From Salpingoeca rosetta (taxonomy: Eukaryota; Protista; Choanoflagellata): DNA of 64,000 bases. Positions within the stretch are counted from its first letter, which is position 1. Every line of letters begins with the position of its first letter. The stretch is taken from assembly GCA_033442325.1 (NCBI GenBank), contig JAWQFM010000005.1, positions 1,923,665-1,987,664 on the forward strand, given 5' to 3'. This document shows, one piece after another, positions 37,832 through 64,000 of this stretch. A program made the translations under genes and the position numbers. Under the pieces are notes generated by a model. That model did no database searches and was not told the origin of the DNA. It worked only from the letters and a program-made list of their open reading frames with translations.

Positions 37832-38265
37832 CTGCTCAGAGAACTTGTGTTCGTGTGTGTGTTTGTGTGTTTGTGTGTTCGTTGTGTTGCCCTCCCCCCC
37901 CCCCACCTTTTTTTTTTTTTTTTGTTTTTGCTTCGGTTCGCACACCACTTGCTTGTGTTGACGCATGTCGCTTCGTCTAATGCCGACTTGTCTGTCGATG
38001 AGAGAGGTTATTCATACACACTAACGTAAGAACAAGAACATGGCGACCCTACATCAGTGTCATGTCATGTCACTACAAGTCGGGCCAGCGGCACACATGC
38101 AAGAGAGGCAAAGAGACACGAGACGACAAAAATAAGGACGCGTTCAGCCATCAACAGGCAAAAACACGGGGAAGAAGTGTACAGATCAGCGACCGCAACA
38201 GAAGGAAAGGAAGGGAGGAAGGGGAGCAATTAGGTCAAAATCGGGAGGGGGGGGATCACAAAGCG

Positions 38266-38667
38266 TCAGCTGCGCTTCTCTTTGACGGATGTGGGGACTG
38301 GATTGACAAAAAAGTCGTGGTGCATGAGCTCTGCCGCCGTTGCGCGGTCTGCGGGCTCATATGCGACCATGGCGCGGATAAACGACAGCATCTGCTGGTC
38401 CTCCGGCAGCGACGTGAAGTATTCGTCAAGCCGCTCCGGTCGGTCGCCCACATACCGCACGCTCGACGTGCCCTCTGCAAGCTCCGGCCACCGCAGCAGC
38501 CCGTCAGCATCGCCATACCGCTTCCTACAGAGGGTGTGTGTGTGTGTGTGTGTGTGTGTTGCAGGGGTGAGAAAGAAGGGGGATTTGTAAGCTGGGTGGC
38601 CACGTGTGACGTGTGTGCATGTGTTGTCTGGGCGCATTGGTGTTGCATGTGTCGATGGCTGTTCAGC

Positions 38668-38715
<48 letters not shown>

Positions 38716-39509
38716 GGCACCCGACTGGTAACGTACGATGACTCCTTGAGCATGGACGGCGGCAGAGGGCCAAGCAGCGCCTCCATCAGCGCAAGGTGCT
38801 CAACGTTGTCGTGTGTCTGATGTGTGGGCAGAGGGGTGCAGGCAGGAAGGGGCATGTGCACGTATGTGCATGTGCGCGCGTGTGTGCGTGAGTGCCTTTT
38901 GAGTGTTGTGTGAGATGATACGCGAGCGAGGCAAACACCCACACCCACACGCGCGCGCACACCCACACATATACACACCCACACCCACACACGCACACTG
39001 TAAGCAGCAACGAAAACGACAACGGCATGTACCTGAAAGGTGGTTTCGCCCGTGTAGAGCTCGAGCAGCACAAATGCGATGCTCCAGATGTCGCACGGAT
39101 GCGACCAGCCCGTCTCTGCAAAACATGTGCAGGGCAACAGCGCATTGGCAGAGGGTCATGAGCACAGGAAACAAAGAAAAGAAACCCTCAGTCACCTCCA
39201 ACCACACAAATACGCATGCACGCTGATGTAGATCCGAACAACGGAGCACGCGAAGCATGGCTCCCTCCCATATCCATATGGGTGTGAGCGTAGGCGTGTA
39301 TGCTCCGCGTTTGAGCACATGGGAACGTACCAAGGATGACTTCTGGGGCGCGGTAATGCCTTGTGGTGACGACGCGCGTGTGGTAGTCCCAATCAAACGT
39401 GGCCGACCCAAAGTCAATCATCTGTGCACGCCATTGTTGGAACAGCGAGTGAGGGGCGAAGCAGACACACACGCACATAGGGCGCAAACGCACGCACACA
39501 CGCACACAG

Positions 39510-39546
<37 letters not shown>

Positions 39547-40505
39547 GAGACGTGAAGCGAAATGTGGGACCTTGATGCGCGGGTTGTCGACGTGCAGCTC
39601 GGTTGGTTTGGAGAACAGCTGTTGGTAGGAAGCACGGAACGCAAGTAGTGCAATGTAACCGCAAGGTGAATACACGGACAGGGCCAGCAGTAGAAATGTT
39701 GACGCAATCCAATCAAGCGCTTGCTGTTGCCAGGAGAACACGAGCACACACACACACATACATATACACACATCCACATATACACCCACATACACACACG
39801 TGCAAACGCAAGAAAGAGACCTCTTTGACGTTGACGGGGCCTTCAAAGAGAATGTTCTCTGGCTTAATGTCCGTGTGTGTGATCATGTTTCGATGCAAGA
39901 CTACATCAAAATGACACCCATACAAGTCGACGCGTGCGTGAGCGGAGGATATTCAGCACAGCGCAGACGAGGGCAAGCACACAGCATTCAGCGCGAGCAT
40001 CTGCCTTTCAAAACACAGACACGGACACGGACACGGACACACACAGACACACAGACACATACACACGAGGCATTCAATTACTCCTCTCTGCCCTGCACGG
40101 CACGGAAAGCAACCCGGCTTACAAGTGAGGGCGGCAATGCACTGGTGGGAGATGGAGCGCAGAGTCTCCATTGTAAAAGGGATGAAGGAGTGGTCCTTGA
40201 GGACATCATAGAGGCTTTGGCCGAGCAGCGGAAACACCATGCACACGTGGCCATCCAGTTCAAAGTAGTTCAGCAGATGGACGCACGGACTGTTCAAAGG
40301 GGTTTTCGAGAGCCAGCGTCAGGTTCAGTGGGGCGGTGGGATGATGATGGTCACGGGGGAGGAGGAAGGTAGAGATGATTGGACGGTGGTGGAAGCGGGG
40401 GAGGGGAGGGATGTGAAGAAGGGGAAGAAGAAGAAGAAGAAGAGAAGAGGTGGAGGGGCGAAGTTGAAGCGGTGGGGGTGGTGATGACGGGAGGAGGAGG
40501 AGGAG

Positions 40506-40567
<62 letters not shown>

Positions 40568-41979
40568 TAGGGGTGGAGGTGAAGAGGCGGTGGTTGTGGT
40601 GCGTGCGGAGAAGAAAGAAAGGAAGGAAGGGAAGGGAAGCGGAAAGGGAGCAGCAAGGATAACAGAATGGTGGATGTTGATTCAGGGAAGAGGGAGGATG
40701 CGATGAAAAATAAGGCGACAACATGTGTGCGTGGGTGATAGGGGTGGTGTGGGTGCGTGCGGGTGCGTGCGAGTGTCTCGAGTGCTGCTGAGGCATCAGA
40801 GTGTCATGGATGCACAGAGAGAAAGCTCAGAAAGGGGGGGGGGGGAAGAGAAGGGGTTGGGGTTGTTTAGACATACTGCTGCTGCTCGCTATCTCGTTTG
40901 GAGATGCAGGTCAAGATTTTCCGCTCTTCTTGCGCAGCGGTTCTGCAAACAAAGCCGGTGGTAAGCCAGAGGACAGCATGGGGGAACAAGAGAAGGTGGG
41001 AGGTGAGAAGAAAGGAATGACACGGTGGGAAAGGAGTGATGTGTCAGCAAGGGTGGGGAATCATGCCACGATACAAAATATGCTGAAGCTCAGCGTCACA
41101 AGCGAGCGCACAATGCCACAGCAAGCATGCCAAGGGGAGAGAGTGTGTGGGTGTACGTGTATGTGTGTGTGCATGGGTGTGTGTATGTATGGGTGCACGT
41201 ACATGTATTTGGGAATGTTTCGAATAATCTTGACCGCAACCCTGTGACCTCCACTAGTTTGACGTGAACAGCCAAGGTAGAAGCCGAACAACAACAAGAC
41301 AGGGAAAGGGGATGAGGCAATGACGGCGCGAGCGGGCGCAGCTCACGCGCGCGCACAAAGGGGTAGAAGAACCAGCGTGCGACAGCAACACGCGCTGCAT
41401 GATCACCACACACACACACACACGCACGCACAAATACACGTTGCACACACAAGACACCCACCCACACCCACACACCCACATGGCGCACCAACCTCGTGCA
41501 TTCGTACACGCGGCCAAAAGTGCCTTCACCAAGGCGCTTGTCGACAGTGTACGTTGTGTCTGGCGCACGCAATTGGTCTTGTGTGCGCACGCGCATGTGA
41601 CCATCGTCCTGTGGTCGGCGCTATCACCCACCCAAGCGGCAAAACGAGCAAGCAATACACCGTGTGAACAACAAAACGAGCAAGCAGCAAGACACGTGCA
41701 CAAACACAACAACATCAGGCGCGAGCAGCTCATGGCTTGATCCAAATGCAGCAAACAGCAGTTGTAAGCATTCCCTCTCTCCCTCTCTCCCTCTTTCACA
41801 CACACACACACACACCCTTCCTCACACACACCCTCTCTCTCCCTCACACACACACACACCCTCTCACACACACGTGTGTCAACTTCACGCGTGCGCACGA
41901 GTGAGCCAGCGAGCTCGCAGTCAGTCGTTCGTACCTTGTGCGAGTGGTCTGGGGAGTGTTTGCGTTTCCTTCCCGTCAT
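38266..41979 (-). CDS. CLK: CLK/LAMMER-family dual-specificity kinase (multi-exon)
   Basis: [62 protein letters not shown], and the LAMMER-box variant [11 protein letters not shown]. Confidence 0.93.
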
Positions 41980-43120
41980 GGTGATGCCAGCAAACAACTA
42001 CAACAGCAACTGCGACGGCGATGACCAAAATAAATCCAGCAGCCTGTGCTCGAACCCCAGCTGATAAATCAACCACGGGTGCCTTCCCGCCGACGTATGC
42101 ACAGAAAGAGAGAGATAGAGAGAGAGAACAGTGGTGGTGTTGTTGAGTTGAGAGCGCAGCGTGGTGAGTCTGCGACGACGACGATGATGATGCTGCAGCT
42201 GCTGATGGTGATGATGGTGTGCTCACGACTTCTCGGCAGCGTGTGGTCGTTCGTTGACACACACCACTCACCTTCTTGCTTCCAGAATAGTTGCTTCGTT
42301 TTATTTTCGTGGCGGGCACCTGGGCCCGTCCCATAAGGCTCACCAGCAGGCGTGGAACGCCGCAACGTATCCACCACAGCGTGTGCGCATTAGGGCGGTT
42401 TGCGCTGTTGCTTTTCCCAGCTCAGCATTTACCTCTCTCTCTCTTTCTGGCGTGGCTTCTTCGTCTCTGTGGTGAGTTCATGGGTGGCTTGATCTTGTGC
42501 TGCAGCTGGTTGGTGGTGCAAGGGTTGAAGATGATGCTGATGGTGGTGGTCGTGGGTGGTGGAGATGAACGTGACCGCAACAGCAGCCAGCCAGCCAGCT
42601 TCCCCTTGCAGTGACCTCCACATCATCTTGTGGACCGCCACTGGCGCCTGCACATGAAACATAGACCAGCAACGCAAACAACCAGTACTGCCGCCAAGCG
42701 TGCACGTTGCGTGGACAATTTGATTCTGCAAACACAAACAAAACCACCCGCATCAACAGCAACAGCACCCATATCCGCTGCTTCCCGCAAGTGGCCTCAC
42801 CACAATGCCTTGTTTACATCACACACACACAGACACACGTACGTACACCCGCACACAGGGACTCATTCACATGCATTCACTCACATTTGTGTGTGTTGTC
42901 CTGTCTTGTCTCGCTCTTTTGTGGTCATCCTCGTGTTCATTTTGCTTCATCGCCGACCGGATATCAGGTGGCGCGCACGTCTCTTGTCCTTCTTTCTCCT
43001 TCTTCCTCCTCCTTCTCCTTCTTCGTTCTCTTTCTTTCCTTCTCTCCCCTACTTGTCTTCGCTTAGCCGTGCTCCGCAGATCCACCCGCGACCTTGCACC
43101 GAGCACCGCTGTCAGCCGCC

Positions 43121-46100
43121 ATGGCGTACCTGCGCGTCTGCCTGGCCCTCGTTGTGGCCCTGGCTGTCGCAAACGCAACCACCGTCCTGCACTCCGCAGA
43201 CGGTGCGTTGCTCTCCACTGTGCTGCACATCACATTGCCTCTGTTTGTTTCCTCTTTCGCTCTTTCACATGGGTTCTGGCGCCCAACACACGGACATACA
43301 CAGACAGACAGACAGACACACACACACACAAGCACACACGCGCGCGGACATCAACACACCAAACACAATGTACTCATACACCCCCCCCCACAAACACACA
43401 CACACACTCCTGCACTCACCCGTCCCCCCACAAACACACGGCAGTGGAAGCGCCGTCCATCATCAACACGCGTTCCCTTGAGCGGAATGCCCGTGCCCTG
43501 GATGCCCTTGAGCCCGGCGAGGCCCGCCCAGAGTTTGCCATCTCGCCCGAGGTCGTTGTTGGCCCCGTGCGCCAACTCATCTACCCGGGCACACCCGAGT
43601 TTGACCAGTTTCTCCCTCCCAACGTGAGCTTCTTCCCACCACCATCACACATGAATACGAGAGCTTAGCGTGCTCAAAGTAGACGTTTCCACACACACAA
43701 CGACTCGTGTTGCACAACCACATGCACGTACAATCACACGCACACACACGCACACACACACACACACACACACGTGCGCGACATCTATCACACACACTCA
43801 CACAATCACAATCACACACACACACACAATCACACACACTCACACTTCTCCCCAACCCCCTCTCTTCTTTTTCCTTGTAGGACAATGAGGACATCTTCTT
43901 CGTCCAGGAAATTGCCCGGCACATGAGCCCGCGCATGGCGCAGGTGCTGGACATCCTCGCCCAGACTGTGAAGCAGCTCAAGCTTTCCGACGGTACCCCC
44001 CTGCGCCTCGCTGTTCGCAACGGTTACGAGGACCCCACGGGCTCCGAGACCTCGCCCGAGCTGTTCCACGAGGGCCGCATGGTGGACCTCGCCCTGTACA
44101 ACACGGGCAACGGCGACATCATCAACAACGCCGCCGACATGGGCACGCTCGCGGCGCTGGCGTGGAGGGACCGCCTGGACTGGGTGCGCCACTTCCAAAT
44201 CACCCCACAGAATGCCGCGCAGTTCAGCTTTGTGCGCGTTGCCGTCGTCCCTGAGTCGTGCGGTGCCACCCTCGACTTTGCCTTCCTGCTCGACGGCTCC
44301 GGCTCCCTCCTCCAGTCTGGCTGGGACTCGCAGATCCAGTTTGTCAAGGACGTCACTGCCTACTTTGACGTCGGCCGCAACCGCACGCACGTCGGCATTG
44401 TCACCTTCCACGGCCCGCGCGTGTCCCACCTCAGCTACAACGAGTCCATCCCGGACTGCCCGCTCGGCACCGTGTGGGAGCCCGATGGCGAGGGCTGCAT
44501 CTGCGAGGTTGAGGGCTCCCAGTGCACCGGCTCCGCCTGCGGCACGGGCTACTACGAGCTCGAGGCCGGTGGCTGCCAAGGCGCCACAGACCAGAACATC
44601 GACACCCTGCCAGACTGCGAGATTCGCCAGTTCTTCCCACACGGCTGCGCTGACTGCACGTGCAACCCGCTCGGCCAGAAGTACCAGCCCAGCGACTCGT
44701 ACACGGTTGACCAGCTATTCTCCATGACCCAGGACCACGACGACCTCGCCGCCACGCTCGACTCGCTCGTCTTCCCCGACGGCGCCACCCACATGTCGGC
44801 CGGGCTCGAGCAGATTCGCGACACCATCTTCCAGCTGCGCAACGGCATGCGCGAGTACGAACAGGCCATCCCGCGCGTCCTCATCGTCCTCACAGACGGC
44901 AAGTCCAACCCGGGCTTTGAGCCGCACGAGGTGGCGGAGCAGCTGCGCAACCGCGGCATCATCATCTACGCCATTGGCGTCGGCGACTACTACCTGCCGG
45001 AGCTCGAGGCCATGGCCTCGGAGCCCATGGACCGCCACGTCTACGAGCTGGCCGACCCTTCCTCCCTCTTCACCATTGTGGACCGCCTCAGCTTCGACAC
45101 GTGCGACATCCCGGGCCTGCTCCGTGCTGGCGCGCGCATCGCCCTCAGCCTCAGCGCAAACGAGTTCCGCTATTTCACCATCGAGTGCAACGACAACCCG
45201 GACGCGCTCACAGACAAGGTCATTGTCGAGCTCATTGACAGCCCTGACGGCAGCAGGACCCACCTCTTTGTGTCCTCGCGCACCCCAAACCCAACCTCCC
45301 TCAACCACGCCCAGTCGCTCGGCCCACTGCCGCCTGCAAAGGTGCTCGTGCACGACCGCACCTTCTCCGACGGCAGCAGCGGCCTCGTCCACGTCGCCGT
45401 GCAGGCCGCGGCCGGCAAGGACGTCAGCAACGCCCAGCTTGTCGTGTACCAGCTGCTCTTCACAGACTTCCGCCCCATTGTCAGCGTACCGGAGGACACG
45501 TCCCCGGGCACGGAGGTTGTGCCGCCCGCACAGCTGATCGACAGCATCGATGCCGGCATCACCTTCCGCTACTCGCTTGAAGACCCGTATGGCACGTTTG
45601 CCATCAACCCGGCGGACGGTTCCATCACCCTGGCCGGCCCCCTCAACCGCGAGGCCCTTGATACGTACGTTGTGCGCCGCTGGGTCGTCGACTCCCCACC
45701 CGTCGCCGACCAGTGCCTCCGCAGCTTCCAGTTTGTCACCATCTCCGTCTCCGACGTCAACGACAACGTGCCAGTGTTCAGCCAGTCGCTGTACGAGGTC
45801 AACCTGCCCGAAACCCTCCGCGAGCGCCCCGCCCGCCGCCGCCGCGCCGTGGGCACTGTTCTGGTGACCATCTCCGCCACGGACGACGACACGGGCGACA
45901 ACGCCGAGGTGCGTTACTCCATCACCGGCGGCAACGAGCTCGGCCTGTTTGCCCTCGACGAGGTCACTGGCGACTTCACCCTGGAGAAGCCCGTCGACTT
46001 TGAGGAGCTCACCAACCCCGTGCTCGACATTACTGTCGTGGCCACGGACCTTGGCGGCGCCGTGTCTGACCCGGCCACCATCCGCGTCACCGTGCAGGAC

Positions 46101-49100
46101 CGCGACGACCTCCCCGTCTTTGAGTCGGACCAGCTGCCGGAGCTGACCATCTTCGCCGGCGACATTGGCCCCGTCGGCTTTGCCCCCGTCGTCGATGATA
46201 GCCGCAAGAACACGTTTGAGTGCCGCCTCACCACCCCTGGCACCCCATTCACCGTCGCCGCCGCCACGAGCGGCGCCACCGGCTGCAACATTGTTGCGCA
46301 GTCCTCCACCACGGAGCTCGGCGGGCAGATGTTCACCCTCATGCTGGAGATTGCCGACCAAGTCGGCGTGCTGTCGCGCACCCGCGTCGTCGTCAACGTG
46401 CTGCCCACCAACCGCGACCCGCCCGAGTTTGCCATGGACATCTTTGATGTCCTCCTCTCCGTGGCCACGCAGATTGACACCACCGTGGTTGACCTTGGCG
46501 TGACAGACCCCGATGGCGACGCCGTGTCCTGCAAGCTCCTCTCCTCCCCCAAGGGCCTCTTCCGCATCGACGACTGCCAGCTCGTGCTGGACTCGCGCCT
46601 GCCCACGGATGGCCCCACCTTCTTTGACTTGCTTGTGGAGGCGTCGGATGCGCCCACGCGCGGCAACCGCAACCTCACGTCCACGGCCCACGTCCAGATT
46701 ACGCTCACGGGCGTGTGCCCGAGCGACGACGCGTCCTGCACGTGCGCGGACGAGGGCGCCACGCCGCCCAACTGCACCCCAGACCTGTGCGAGGCCTTCC
46801 CTTGCGTCAACGATGGCGTGTGCTCGCAGGGCGTGAGCAACCAAGGCCTGCCCGAGCGCAAGTGCATGTGCGCCGACTTCTTTGGTGGTGACGACTGCGA
46901 GGTGACGCCGTGCGACGACACGCCCTGCATGAACGGCGGCACGTGTAACCCCACCCCCAATGTCGGTCCTGGCTTCTCCTGTGACTGCCCCGTGACCCAC
47001 GATGGTGACATGTGCGAGAACGAGACGGGCATCACCACGACGACCACAACCACAACCACAACCACCACCACCACCACGCTCAACCCGTGCGATGGTTCGC
47101 CCTGCTCTGAGGGCCAGTTTTGCCGCCGCGTCGACGACACCAACTTTGAGTGCGTGGACGGGAGCACCACCACAACCACCACCACGACCACCACCACCTT
47201 GTCCACGACCACGGCAGCCACGACCACCACCACGACAACGACGACGACGACGACCACAACCACGACGACATCGCCGCTGGCCACTGTGACGTTCACGGTT
47301 CCCGACGATGACGAGATCAACGACTGCTCCCAGTGCCAGAACGGCGGAACGTGTGTGAGGACACCCACTGGCCAGGTGACGTGCGACTGCCCACGCGTGC
47401 AGCAGGGCCGCTTCGAGCTGTGCTACGAGAACGCCGACTGCACCTCGCAGCTCCCCTGTGACCAGGTGCCGTTCCCTCGTGGCGATGCCACGGGCTCCAG
47501 CACGTCCACGCCTGCCACCCGCCCTGAGGTGCCGTACACGGTTCCGGACAGCGACGTCATCGACGACTGCTCGCAGTGCGAGAACGGCGGGACGTGCGTT
47601 GTGACGTCGTCCGGCCAGCTGACGTGCGAGTGCCCGCGCGTGCGCCAGGGCGGTGTTGAGCGCTGCTACGAGGATGCCCGCTGCACCAACCTGAGCCCCT
47701 GCGACGAGGTTCCTTTCCCCCGCGGCGACGCCTCTGTCTCCACCACCGCTGCTGCCACCGTCACCTTTACCGTGCCAGACCAGTTTACTGTCTCGGACTG
47801 CACTCTGTGCCAGAACGGCGGCGTGTGCGCGTTCACTGCCAGCGGCCAGCAGTTCTGCCAGTGCCCCCGCGTGCCGATTGGGTCAACCGACTTTTGCTAC
47901 GAGAACTTTGACTGCACGTCGCTGCAGCCGTGCGACCAGGTGGATGGCCCCAACGGCGACCGCTCCGCGTCGACCAACTCGGCCAACAACTCGGCCTCCA
48001 CAGGCATCATTGTTGGCGCCGTCATTGGCGGCCTCCTCTTCATCATCCTCGTGCTCTTCCTCCTCAGCTTCTGCTGCAACATTGCCCTGTGCGCTTGCCT
48101 CGGTGGTGCGGCCTGTTGTGCTGGTGGTGGCACGCCAACGGCACCCATGTACGAGACTGCGGACAACAAGGCCGCCTCCTTTGACAACCCCACGTTTGTG
48201 TCGCACTACGCGGCCACGGGCACCGGCGGCGCGGGCGTCAACGGGCCCAACGCGCTGTCCAACCCCTTCTACGCCATGGGCGCCACAGGCAACAAGGGCA
48301 CCGGTCAGTACGATAGCGTCAACGGCCAGTACGACAGCATCCAGGAGCCGACCTACGACAGCGTCAACGGTGCGTGGCCGCATGCGTCATGGATGGCCGT
48401 GTCTTCGTGTGTTGTCGTGTGATGTTGTGTGCGTGCGTGAATGTGAGAATGCGTATGCGTGACTGTGTATGCGTGTACTCTGTTGTTTGTTTTCAACACT
48501 GTGCTATTGTGCGATCTTGCGTTCCACCTTTCTCATGTACCAGCGTCTCACAATCCACCTCATCCCTCCTCATCAACTTCTTCTTCTTTTTCCCACACAA
48601 CCGTCTGTCGACCCCTCCATCCACCAATTTGCACCGCAGACGGCCATGCGTCTCTGCGCAGCAACAACCGCATGCAGGTTGAGCAGGGCCGCATCCGCCT
48701 GGCCTCTGTTGCCCGCCACAACCCGCTGACAGCAGAGTCGTCCACGGACGCCGCCGCTTCCCTCGACAACCCTATGTACCAGGTTGGCCAGCAGAACGGC
48801 TCCAGCCCCATGTACGCACCCGTTGACGGGCAGCCCTCGTCCATGAGCAACCCCACCTACGAGCGCGCACAAGGCCAGGCACCTTCCAACGTCACATATG
48901 CAGCACCAACAGCCTCGGCGGTGAGGAAGTTGTTTGGGGGTGTGGGGGTGTTGGGGTGTTGGGGAATTGGTGCCGGATGGCCCGTCGACCATGTCATGAG
49001 CCATGTTGCCGTGTGTTATGTGTTGTGTGTGTCGTGTGATGCGTGATGCGCGCGCGCGTGTGTGTTGTGTGTGTGTTTCTCGGCACGTTGGGTCCCTTTT

Positions 49101-49669
49101 GGAACATGCGCTTGCTTGTTGCTGGTTGTATTTGACAATTTATGCTCACCACTGGTCGTGACCTGCTCATTATGTGTACAGGAATCTGACATGTACTTTG
49201 ACGTCGACGCCAGGAACGAGGCTGAGGAAGCTTACACCCAGCACCGCATTGCTGCCACGGTACGTTGTATATCATGACAGTACTTGCCTTTACCTATGTG
49301 TGGCTGTGCGTGGTTGCGCACTGATGCCCTCTGTTGTCACTTTTTCCCTGTTGTTTGCGAGTGCCTGTTCCAACTGCAAGCTTCCATTTTGCCTCAGTTC
49401 GCCCGCCGCCACTGCTTGCGTTTGCACTTACCTCATCCCCCCTCACCCCCTCCCACCCCGCAACGCTCAACCTCCATACACTGCAGGGTGATGCGTCGTA
49501 CATTGATGTGCTGCCGCGCTCTGGTGCTGCGCAGAATGCCGCCATGCCCAGCAGCATGAGCAACCCCTCGTATGCCCAGGCTGGCAACAGCATGCCGCAG
49601 TACGACAACCCGACACAGGGCGAGCCTGCGTACGATACGGTCCCCATTGACCACGATGCTACTGCTTAA
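43121..49669 (+). CDS. Hedgling-family receptor: signal peptide, Hedgehog-N, VWA, beta-rich domain, about 4 cadherin repeats, EGF repeats, Thr-rich stalks, TM, Tyr-rich tail (about 1763 aa)
   Basis: Exons 43121-43202, 43445-43623, 43881-48369, 48640-48920, 49182-49259, 49487-49669 sum to 5292 nt. Hh-like PNDNEDIFF...MSPRM...LRLAVRNGYED...FHEGRMVD...LDWV. MIDAS DGSGS and LTDG. Cadherin motifs PED, LNRE, DVNDNVPVF, ATDDDTG, VDFE. CxNGGTC EGF repeats. TM GIIVGAVIGGLLFIILVLFLL. Confidence 0.92.
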
Positions 49670-51137: not shown

Positions 51138-51311
51138 TGGAGAAAGGGAGGATGGCGTGAAGTAGATCCGGTTGGAGACAAGATGTTTGGAACGTGGAGA
51201 CGAGGTGCTGCTCAATGTGAAGGGAGGTGAAATCACAAGAAGTGCATTTTTTTTTTCGCTTCCCCTCCCCCCTCTCACTCTCATTCACCGCACACCTGCC
51301 ATCGTGGACAG

Positions 51312-52281
51312 GGAGCACGCCACTTCCGACGTATCGTCACCTGATCAAGCTGCACAAGGCCGGCAAGGTGTCCTTCAAGCATGTGGTCACCTTCAACATG
51401 GATGAATACTGTGGCCTCCCACGCGACCACCCCGAGTCTTACCACAGCTTCATGGTGAGGCTTACCTGCCTGGGATCGGAAGAGGGGCAAGGGCAAGAGC
51501 GCAGCGGGATGGGCTGTTGTTTCGTGCACACTCGCTCGTCTCTTCCGCAGAAGCGACAAACCCTCACACGCACTCACTTGCGTACACGCTCGCACACGCA
51601 CTCACTTGCGTACACGCTCGCACACGCACCCTAATTTGCATGCGCATGCGTTCATGTATGCAGTGGGAGAACTTGTTCAAGCACATTGACATTGTGCCAG
51701 AGAACGTCCACATCTTGGATGGAAACGCGCCCGACTTGGAGAAGGAGTGCGCCGAGTATGAGAAGAAGATTGAGGCTGTGGGTGGCATCGAACTTTTCCT
51801 TGCAGGTCTGCATCGCAGTGTTCCAGTGCGCGTGTGCGCCTGGGTGGCATGTCTCTACACATGTCCACATTTGCACATGTCAATGTAACAGCAGTCAAGG
51901 TCACGTCTTTCTGCATACGTCCATCGTTTTGTGCCGGTATGGCTTTCTGTTGACCAACCCCCCAAGTCCAACCACACGTGCTTACCGCTGGCCCACACCA
52001 CCGCCCATTGCGTGCCACTGCCACCATCACCAGGTATTGGCCCGGATGGTCACATCGCCTTCAACGAGCCGGGCTCCTCGCTGACATCTCGCACTCGCAT
52101 CAAGACGCTTGCGTATGACACCATCCTCGCAAACGGTACACACACACATATACATACAGGCACATAATTGCCTTTTGCGGCTTCCCGCAACACAAGCTGG
52201 AAATCCGTGCACATTATTCCTCACCCACTCTCTTCCACCCAAACACTCACATGGTCTCTGTTTCTCAATGTCTATGACACA

Positions 52282-52361
<80 letters not shown>

Positions 52362-53105
52362 CACACACGTTCACACACGTTCACACACGTTCACACACTC
52401 ATCATCATCATCCTTTCCTCTTGTGAATCCATAGCGCGTTTCTTTGGAGATGACATTGACAAAGTGCCACACATGGCCCTCACCGTCGGTGTTGGTACTG
52501 TAATGGTAAGTGCACCCCTGAACAATGTATACTGAAACCCCTGCTTTCCCTTTGCTGCTGTGATGAAATTACAGTGATTGTCGCTGTGTCGCGCACGGCA
52601 ACTCCATGTGGCTCGACACGCACCTTGGTGCCCTCAGCATCGGGTGAGCTCACCCAAATGGCTCCCTCATCTCCGCCATCACACACCTGTGCATTGACAG
52701 GACGCCCGCGAAGTCGTTCTGCTGGTCACCGGCGCTCACAAGGTGCGTGCGTGCGTGCGTGTGTGTGTGTGTTTGTGTGTGTGCGTGTGTGCGTGCGTGC
52801 GTGTGTATGCTTGTGTTTGTGGTGTGTGTGTCTTGTGTGCATGAGTGTGTGCATGAGTGTGTGTTTGTGTTGTGCGTGAATGCGCGTGTGCATGCGGGCA
52901 TACTCCCTGTGCACTCACCCGGCTGCCTGTCAATGCACGCGGAGAACAGTCGTACGCCCTGCACAAGGCGATTGAGGACGGCATCAACCACATGTGGACA
53001 TGCTCCTGTCTGCAGAACCATCCACGCGCTCTCATTGTCTGCGACGAGGTCAGAGAGAGAGAGAGAGTGTGTGTGTGTGTGTGTATGTGTGCGTGTGTAT
53101 GTGTA

Positions 53106-53136
<31 letters not shown>

Positions 53137-53423
53137 GCGTGTGTATGTGTGTGGGCATTTGTCTCACTCTCTCACTCTCACTCACTCACTCGCTCACACA
53201 CTCTCTCCATGTGCGCGCATGTGGTCCACACAATACCTCACTTGCGCAATCATCTTCTGCCACCATTTGCTGACAGGACGCCACACTGGAGCTCAAGGTG
53301 AAGACCGTCAAGTACTTCAAGGGCTTGATGAAGGTGATGGTTGAGCGCGAATGCGGCGGTGATCTGGACGACACCACCGTCATCGCACCATCATCTCAAA
53401 GCAAGACAGCAGCAACTTCGTGA
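51312..53423 (+). CDS. GNPDA: Glucosamine-6-phosphate deaminase; the first ~40 codons were not found
   Basis: [78 protein letters not shown]. Exons 51312-51454, 51664-51805, 52034-52135, 52435-52505, 52701-52742, 52950-53048, 53277-53423. Confidence 0.93.

Positions 53424-61300: not shown

Positions 61301-64000
<2,700 letters not shown>

What the first reader, a model, noticed from the sequence alone, without database searches (positions are those of the whole stretch)
45808..45860. Polybasic convertase-like site inserted in cadherin repeat 2: possible Hint-independent Hedgehog shedding
Seen: where repeat 1 has PEDTSPGT, repeat 2 has PETLRERPARRRRAVGT, an insertion of about 9 aa ending in R-R-R-R|A in a surface loop. 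Known: R-x-R/K-R is the furin/kexin consensus, and animal Hedgehog is released by Hint autoprocessing. Inference: cleavage would free, or leave non-covalently and perhaps Ca- or force-dependently attached, a fragment with Hh-N, VWA and cadherin repeat 1. That would give a diffusible Hedgehog-like signal from a tethered receptor.
Basis: partly seen in the sequence, partly recalled or inferred. Interest (0 to 1): 0.8.

Follow-up and report, generated by a model that had tools for sequence, protein, structure and literature searches.

The report
Conserved cut site in choanoflagellate Hedgling
A known Hedgehog-related surface protein of a single-celled relative of animals has a conserved enzyme-cutting signal in the middle of its second cadherin repeat, so it is probably cut there and its two halves then held together by calcium, rather than simply releasing a free Hedgehog signal.

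Summary
Confirmed. The gene is Salpingoeca rosetta Hedgling PTSG_01986, published in 2013. Cadherin repeat 2 has a 9-residue insert ending R-R-R-R|A-V in the exposed A'-B loop. RNA-type contigs from three studies carry it unchanged. It is not chance: 4 of 6 orthologues, including Monosiga brevicollis (R-S-R-R|S-V), have R-x-R-R in this loop with different flanks and codons; such a motif was in 1 of 867 other repeats. The genome encodes an intact furin-like protease. Cleavage is therefore likely but not shown. Free Hedgehog shedding is weakly supported. The cut leaves the first strand of repeat 2 and the DxNDN calcium linker on the head, favouring a non-covalent heterodimer like LAR or Fat1. 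Two orthologues lack the site, as do the cnidarian and sponge Hedglings checked. A 99% copy of the stalk, site included, sits 94 kb upstream under a head without Hedgehog. The Hh domain lacks the palmitoylated cysteine and two zinc ligands. Best reading: a pre-cut, calcium-held break point. The scan noted similar furin-type joints elsewhere in this genome before. New variant of a known kind; no paper describing this site was found.

The parts
43121..43202 (+). Exon 1: start codon and hydrophobic signal peptide
   Evidence: RNA joint; translation; exon lengths sum to 5292 nt, the length listed for PTSG_01986
43445..43623 (+). Exon 2: short pro-region with a weak R-N-A-R|A-L motif (43480-43494) and the start of the Hh-N domain
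   Evidence: orthologues have a full R-x-R-R site before Hh-N
43881..44255 (+). Exon 3 part of the Hedgehog N-terminal (Hedge) domain; Zn ligands degenerate
   Evidence: Pfam HH_signal 26.6 bits, over the 22.1 cut-off; orthologue profile hits Ihh/Shh/Dhh structures at E about 1e-8
44259..45104 (+). VWA domain with a cysteine-rich insert
   Evidence: Pfam VWA E 6e-31; alignment
45105..45467 (+). Unnamed jelly-roll beta-sandwich (GOLD/PPC/CUB-like fold), typical of Hedgling-like proteins
   Evidence: no Pfam hit; AF2 pLDDT 93; Foldseek best hits GOLD, SIDT2, PPC, E 4e-4 to 1e-3; 100 relatives
45468..45767 (+). Cadherin repeat 1 (PE, DRE-like and DxNDN calcium motifs; linker at 45753-45767)
45768..46109 (+). 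Cadherin repeat 2 (AxDxD intact); strand A/A' lies before the predicted cut
45807..45857 (+). A'-B loop with the 9-residue insert; R-R-R-R at 45834-45845; predicted scissile bond between 45845 and 45846
46110..48002 (+). Two degenerate cadherin-like repeats, EGF-like repeats and Thr-rich stalk
   Evidence: Pfam; sequence
45747..47981 (+). Segment duplicated at 99% identity in a Hedgehog-less cadherin gene about 94 kb upstream (L037)
   Evidence: the independent DNA run branches at both ends and shows the two variant letters
48003..48071 (+). Transmembrane helix followed by a cysteine cluster
   Evidence: sequence
48072..49669 (+). Cytoplasmic tail with NPxY-type tyrosine motifs (end of exon 3; exons 48640-48920, 49182-49259, 49487-49669)
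   Evidence: exon 6 inferred from splice signals and the 5292-nt total

Best explanation
A furin-type proprotein convertase cuts this Hedgling after R742 in the secretory pathway. The cut is inside repeat 2, so the head (Hh-N, VWA, beta-sandwich, repeat 1; about 720 residues) keeps the first strand of repeat 2 and the DxNDN linker, while the membrane piece keeps the rest of repeat 2 with its AxDxD calcium ligands. The two pieces stay together by strand complementation and the shared calcium site, as a non-covalent heterodimer like LAR phosphatases, Fat1 or S1-cut Notch. The joint is a built-in break point that can part under pull, low calcium or a second cut. It is an optional stalk feature of choanoflagellate surface proteins, not a Hedgehog-specific substitute for Hint. 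Shown: motif, expression, conservation, loop position in a model, presence of the enzyme gene. Inferred: cleavage, continued association, the trigger for release.
For: Site in 4 of 6 members of a supported clade (99/94), with different flanks and arginine codons; chance of 3 of 5 other orthologues is below 3e-4 even at a generous background rate. Exposed loop between strands A' and B. Furin-like gene with the catalytic Asp/His/Asn/Ser motifs and most acidic pocket residues, E 2e-110 to furin, and a second one. No cysteine in repeat 2 and even cysteine counts on each side (14 in the exon-3 part of the head, 48 in the stalk), consistent with no disulfide across the cut. Same stalk and site under a Hh-less head. 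Other Hedgling-like proteins carry R-x-R-R inserts in the middle (C-D) loop of a repeat, where a cut splits the fold in half. Similar motifs in non-Hh proteins of this genome. Precedents: PMC8711739 (LAR), PMC3953070 (Fat1), PMC2770060 (Notch S1).
Against: No protein-level data. Strand A of cadherin repeats is the mobile strand in strand-swapping cadherins (own knowledge), so the hold may be weak and release constitutive. Two orthologues do without the site. AlphaFold cannot model the cut state and no coordinates were returned to check contacts.
Confidence: 0.55

Rival explanations
1. One reading: the cut sheds a diffusible Hedgehog-like ligand, a Hint-independent forerunner of animal Hh release.
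For: The site lies between Hh-N and the membrane and is old within choanoflagellates. 12 of 36 Hedgling-like proteins with cadherin hits have some R-x-R/K-R after the head (a few may be cytoplasmic). Patched-family genes are present (PMC4054682).
Against: No N-terminal Cys-Gly-Pro-Gly and no cholesterol-adding Hint; Zn ligands degenerate (Hedglings lack the full motif per 10.1101/276295). No Frizzled/Smoothened hit (a search with no positive control). The freed piece would have four domains, about 79 kDa. The site is reused without Hh and absent in repeat 2 of Hydra, Sanderia and Sycon Hedglings and PTSG_11807. S. rosetta already has three small secreted Hh-VWA proteins.
Confidence: 0.12
2. 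The head is released but not as a signal: it is a pro-region that is discarded, as for the two N-terminal repeats of Drosophila N-cadherin, or it is left stuck to the substrate or theca when the cell detaches.
For: DN-cadherin loses two EC repeats by furin-type cleavage and the piece is unstable (PMC8325961). The S. rosetta Hedglings are reported upregulated in attached thecate cells.
Against: Removal would leave repeat 2 without its first strand. The head is the best-conserved part of the protein, which fits poorly with a discarded piece.
Confidence: 0.17
3. The loop is not cut in vivo. It is a tolerated basic insert, or binds polyanions, and in S. rosetta may partly reflect CGC repeat slippage.
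For: All four codons are CGC here and in P0002; loss in 2 of 6 orthologues; no experimental cleavage.
Against: CGC is 59 of 66 arginine codons in this exon, and other orthologues use CGC-AGT-CGT-CGT and CGG-CGG-CGG-CGA. The conserved element is the P4/P2/P1 arginines followed by a small or acidic residue and valine, not overall charge.
Confidence: 0.16

Closest known systems
Hedgling family; this gene is S. rosetta PTSG_01986 (Fairclough et al. 2013, PMC4054682)
   Same: Signal peptide, Hh-N next to VWA, cadherin repeats, EGF, one transmembrane helix; no Hint.
   Different: No processing site in it was found described in the papers searched; compact form with two canonical and two degenerate repeats.
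LAR-family phosphatases, Fat1 and Notch S1: convertase-cut non-covalent heterodimers (PMC8711739, PMC3953070, PMC2770060)
   Same: Polybasic site in the ectodomain of a single-pass receptor; halves expected to stay bound; release possible later.
   Different: Those cuts lie towards the membrane end of the ectodomain; here the cut is inside a cadherin repeat about 720 residues from the membrane.
Drosophila N-cadherin and vertebrate type I/II cadherin prodomain removal (PMC8325961)
   Same: Furin-type site within or before a cadherin array; R-x-R-R|A-type motifs also seen here in vertebrate 'neural-cadherin' proteins.
   Different: Those sites are between repeats and the N-piece is discarded; this one is within a repeat.
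Animal Hedgehog (Hh-N plus Hint)
   Same: Homologous Hh-N domain, separated from the rest of a precursor by proteolysis if the site is used.
   Different: No Hint autoprocessing, no cholesterol, no palmitoylated cysteine, Zn site degenerate; the piece would carry three further domains.
Bird FAT3-like protein P0069
   Same: R-K-K-R in the same A'-B loop of a cadherin repeat.
   Different: One sequence with a short insert; use as a cleavage site not checked, and no paper on it found.

Membership tests
Hedgling | N-terminal Hh signalling domain | tested here: met
   Pfam HH_signal over cut-off on the exon 3 piece; profile hits Hh structures
Hedgling | VWA directly after Hh-N | tested here: met
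Hedgling | Several cadherin repeats and a transmembrane helix, no Hint | tested here: met
   Hint hits of the genome lie on other contigs
Furin/kexin substrate | R-x-[R/K]-R with permissive P1'/P2' residues | tested here: met
   R-R-R-R|A-V; orthologues |S-V, |A-V, |D-V
Furin/kexin substrate | Site in an accessible loop of a secretory-pathway protein | tested here: met
   AF2 loop between strands A' and B; signal peptide in exon 1
Furin/kexin substrate | Cognate convertase encoded | tested here: met
Furin/kexin substrate | Cleavage shown at protein level | not testable with these tools
   needs westerns or mass spectrometry
S1-type non-covalent heterodimeric receptor | Fragments stay associated without a disulfide | tested here: inconclusive
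   cysteine parity and cut position fit; association not measurable here
Animal Hedgehog ligand | C-terminal Hint domain with cholesterol transfer | tested here: not met
   no Hint in the gene
Animal Hedgehog ligand | N-terminal cysteine for palmitoylation | tested here: not met
   no cysteine after the signal peptide in exons 1-2
Animal Hedgehog ligand | Zn ligands His, Asp, His | tested here: not met
   first His is Phe, Asp kept, no H-x-H
Animal Hedgehog ligand | Binds Patched and signals through Smoothened | not testable with these tools
   Patched-family hits present; no Frizzled/Smoothened hit, uncontrolled search

The most novel reading that the evidence does not exclude
Choanoflagellate Hedglings are pre-cut receptors whose Hh-VWA head is released on demand, by pulling force or calcium loss, through unzipping of one cadherin strand, and the released head acts on other cells through a Patched-family protein. 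Proteolytic release of a Hedge domain would then predate its fusion to Hint.
Probability: 0.12. Interest if true: 0.85.

Novelty: new variant of a known kind. Interest (0 to 1): 0.45.

Why it matters
Hedglings are proposed forerunners of Hedgehog, but nothing on their processing turned up in the papers searched. This gives a residue-level, conserved prediction (cut after R742 of PTSG_01986) that can be tested in S. rosetta. It also suggests that convertase-cut, calcium-held receptor ectodomains, familiar from Notch, Fat and LAR, were in use before animals, here with the cut inside a cadherin repeat. A Hh-less duplicate and two orthologues without the site are natural controls.

Tried and rejected
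Assembly or splice artefact: rejected, four runs agree. CGC microsatellite alone: rejected by codon variety in orthologues. Hedgehog-specific feature: rejected by the Hh-less duplicate and non-Hh examples. Pan-Hedgling feature: rejected. A metagenome scan with the VWA-to-repeat-2 alignment found no locus. Direct phmmer of the Hh piece against PDB found nothing; the profile did. A DNA pattern for RRRRAVG was no more frequent genome-wide than its reversed control (8 against 18), so it says nothing on enrichment. Paper searches found no report of Hedgling cleavage; Adamska 2007 and Nichols 2012 did not come up in these searches and were not read.

Full report
The gene. The window belongs to a 55.4 Mb, 68-contig genome. 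A paralogue on the same contig is S. rosetta PTSG_11807. Spliced contigs from three studies give introns at 43203-43444, 43624-43880, 48370-48639 and after 48920. With two further exons read from splice signals the coding length is 5292 nt, the length listed for PTSG_01986, whose listed domains are Hedgehog, VWA, cadherin and EGF and whose listed neighbours are a kinase and glucosamine-6-phosphate isomerase (PMC4054682 supplements), as in this window. So this is a Hedgling of the 2013 genome paper, which reports two Hedglings upregulated in thecate cells.

The observation. The insert is real: 9 extra residues ending in four arginines at 45834-45845 (residues 739-742), followed by Ala-Val. No variant, indel or splice joint touches it in three RNA-type runs and one DNA run. 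The segment from DxNDN to AxDxD is 32 residues against a mode of 23; R-x-[R/K]-R occurs in this segment once among 68 own-genome matches (this one) and once among 867 others. AlphaFold2 (pLDDT 93) gives two ordinary cadherin repeats with the insert as a lower-confidence loop between strands A' and B.

Conservation. Three word searches and one profile search of the domain between VWA and repeat 1 gave 35 Hedgling-like rows for a tree. The window protein falls in a supported clade of six (99/94). Four have R-x-R-R in this loop: the window (RRRR|AV), M. brevicollis MONBRDRAFT_38707 (RSRR|SV), P0002 (RRRR|AV) and P0224 (RRRR|DV). Barroeca monosierra, the closest, has a longer acidic insert without the site and has also lost the calcium motifs; P0044 has no insert. 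Each of these two is sister to a site-bearing protein, so one gain and two losses is the simplest history; six rows cannot prove it. Flanks and arginine codons differ among the four, which argues against repeat slippage. In about 8,500 residues of these proteins the motif occurs five times, four of them in this loop. Repeat 2 of Hydra, Sanderia and Sycon Hedglings and of PTSG_11807 has no insert.

The enzyme. The genome has four P-domain hits. One exon matches furin at E 2e-110 with the Asp, His, Asn and Ser catalytic motifs and most acidic pocket residues; a second gene matches at 3e-41. Choanoflagellate PCSK-family genes were noted before (PMC2770060). Cleavage is thus likely; it is an inference.

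What follows a cut. The bond lies three to four residues before strand B. The head keeps strand A/A' of repeat 2 and the DxNDN linker; the stalk keeps AxDxD and the rest of the sheet. From general cadherin structure (own knowledge) these parts share the calcium ions of the repeat 1-2 junction. Repeat 2 has no cysteine and cysteine counts are even on both sides. That is the layout of a non-covalent heterodimer, as for LAR, cut at a penta-arginine and staying bound (PMC8711739), and Fat1 (PMC3953070). The alternative precedent is DN-cadherin, cut between repeats with the N-piece lost (PMC8325961).

It is not tied to Hedgehog. About 94 kb upstream a second gene has two ordinary repeats joined to a 99% copy of window 45747-47981, site included, with no Hh or VWA. 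An independent DNA run branches at both ends of this segment and shows the copy's two variant letters, so the copy is real; it was not seen in the RNA contigs, which drop rare variants. Other Hedgling-like proteins have such inserts in another loop of a repeat; in all, 12 of 36 with cadherin hits have a motif after the head, and non-Hh proteins of this genome have them too. Earlier notes of this scan report furin-type 'cut and clasp' joints in other cadherins and in the other Hedgling; I did not test those.

The Hh domain as a ligand. It is a true Hh-N homologue but has Phe for the first zinc histidine, no H-x-H, no N-terminal cysteine and no Hint; degenerate zinc motifs in Hedglings were noted before (10.1101/276295). 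Patched-family genes exist; no Frizzled/Smoothened hit was found, in a search without a positive control. The 2013 paper lists three small secreted Hh-domain proteins as candidate ligands. The piece freed here would be about 720 residues: Hh-N, VWA, a GOLD/PPC-like jelly roll and repeat 1.

Verdict. Observation confirmed and under selection; interpretation partly supported. Most likely (0.55) a pre-cut, calcium-held heterodimer with a built-in break point; head discarded or left on the substrate 0.17; uncut 0.16; diffusible Hedgehog-like ligand 0.12. No paper describing the site was found, though key subscription papers could not be read. New variant of a known kind; interest 0.45. Limits: six orthologues, three from unnamed metagenomic contigs; own-genome background limited to loci already held; no protein data.

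Noticed in passing
L037:4436-7700 (G000:C5, about 1,872,400-1,875,700): Chimeric cadherin gene: own signal peptide and two ordinary repeats, then a 99% copy of window 45747-47981 joined at the last strand before the DxNDN linker, then its own transmembrane helix and short tail. A frameshift sits next to a 100-N gap, probably an assembly error. Supported by an independent DNA run; not seen in the three RNA contig sets.
   Followed up: partly
window 43480-43494 and P0159:70, P0002:113, P0044:90: A second convertase-type site before Hh-N in three orthologues (R-Q-R-R, R-Q-R-R, R-R-R-R); only R-N-A-R in S. rosetta. Suggests a short removable propeptide.
   Followed up: partly
P0001 (Barroeca monosierra) repeat 2: The insert is longer and acidic, without the site, and the DxNDN and AxDxD calcium motifs are lost as well: loss of the cut and of the calcium clasp go together in this one case.
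   Followed up: no
P0270:843, P0294:684, P0272:361, P0226:502: Other Hedgling-like proteins carry R-x-R-R inserts in the C-D loop of a cadherin repeat, an apparently independent placement.
   Followed up: partly
L014 (G000:C36, about 367,000) and L048 (G000:C12): R-R-R-R|D-V in the F-G loop of a repeat just before a Thr-rich stretch in a giant cadherin frame; R-R-R-R|A-V in another open frame that reads like an ectodomain.
   Followed up: no
P0069:284: A bird FAT3-like protein has R-K-K-R in the same A'-B loop.
   Followed up: no
window 45105-45467: Unnamed jelly-roll domain between VWA and repeat 1, 100 relatives at E<=0.001, no Pfam family.
   Followed up: partly
L036 (NCBI GCA_002697785.1, MAS41655.1): The orthologue labelled as a Rhodobacteraceae protein lies on a contig with TMEM138 and an adaptor-complex subunit: a eukaryotic contig in a bacterial bin.
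   Followed up: yes
window 38256-42000, 51227-53300, 61700-63700: Neighbours read as a CLK-type kinase (PTSG_01985), glucosamine-6-phosphate isomerase (PTSG_01987) and a p97/CDC48-like ATPase.
   Followed up: no
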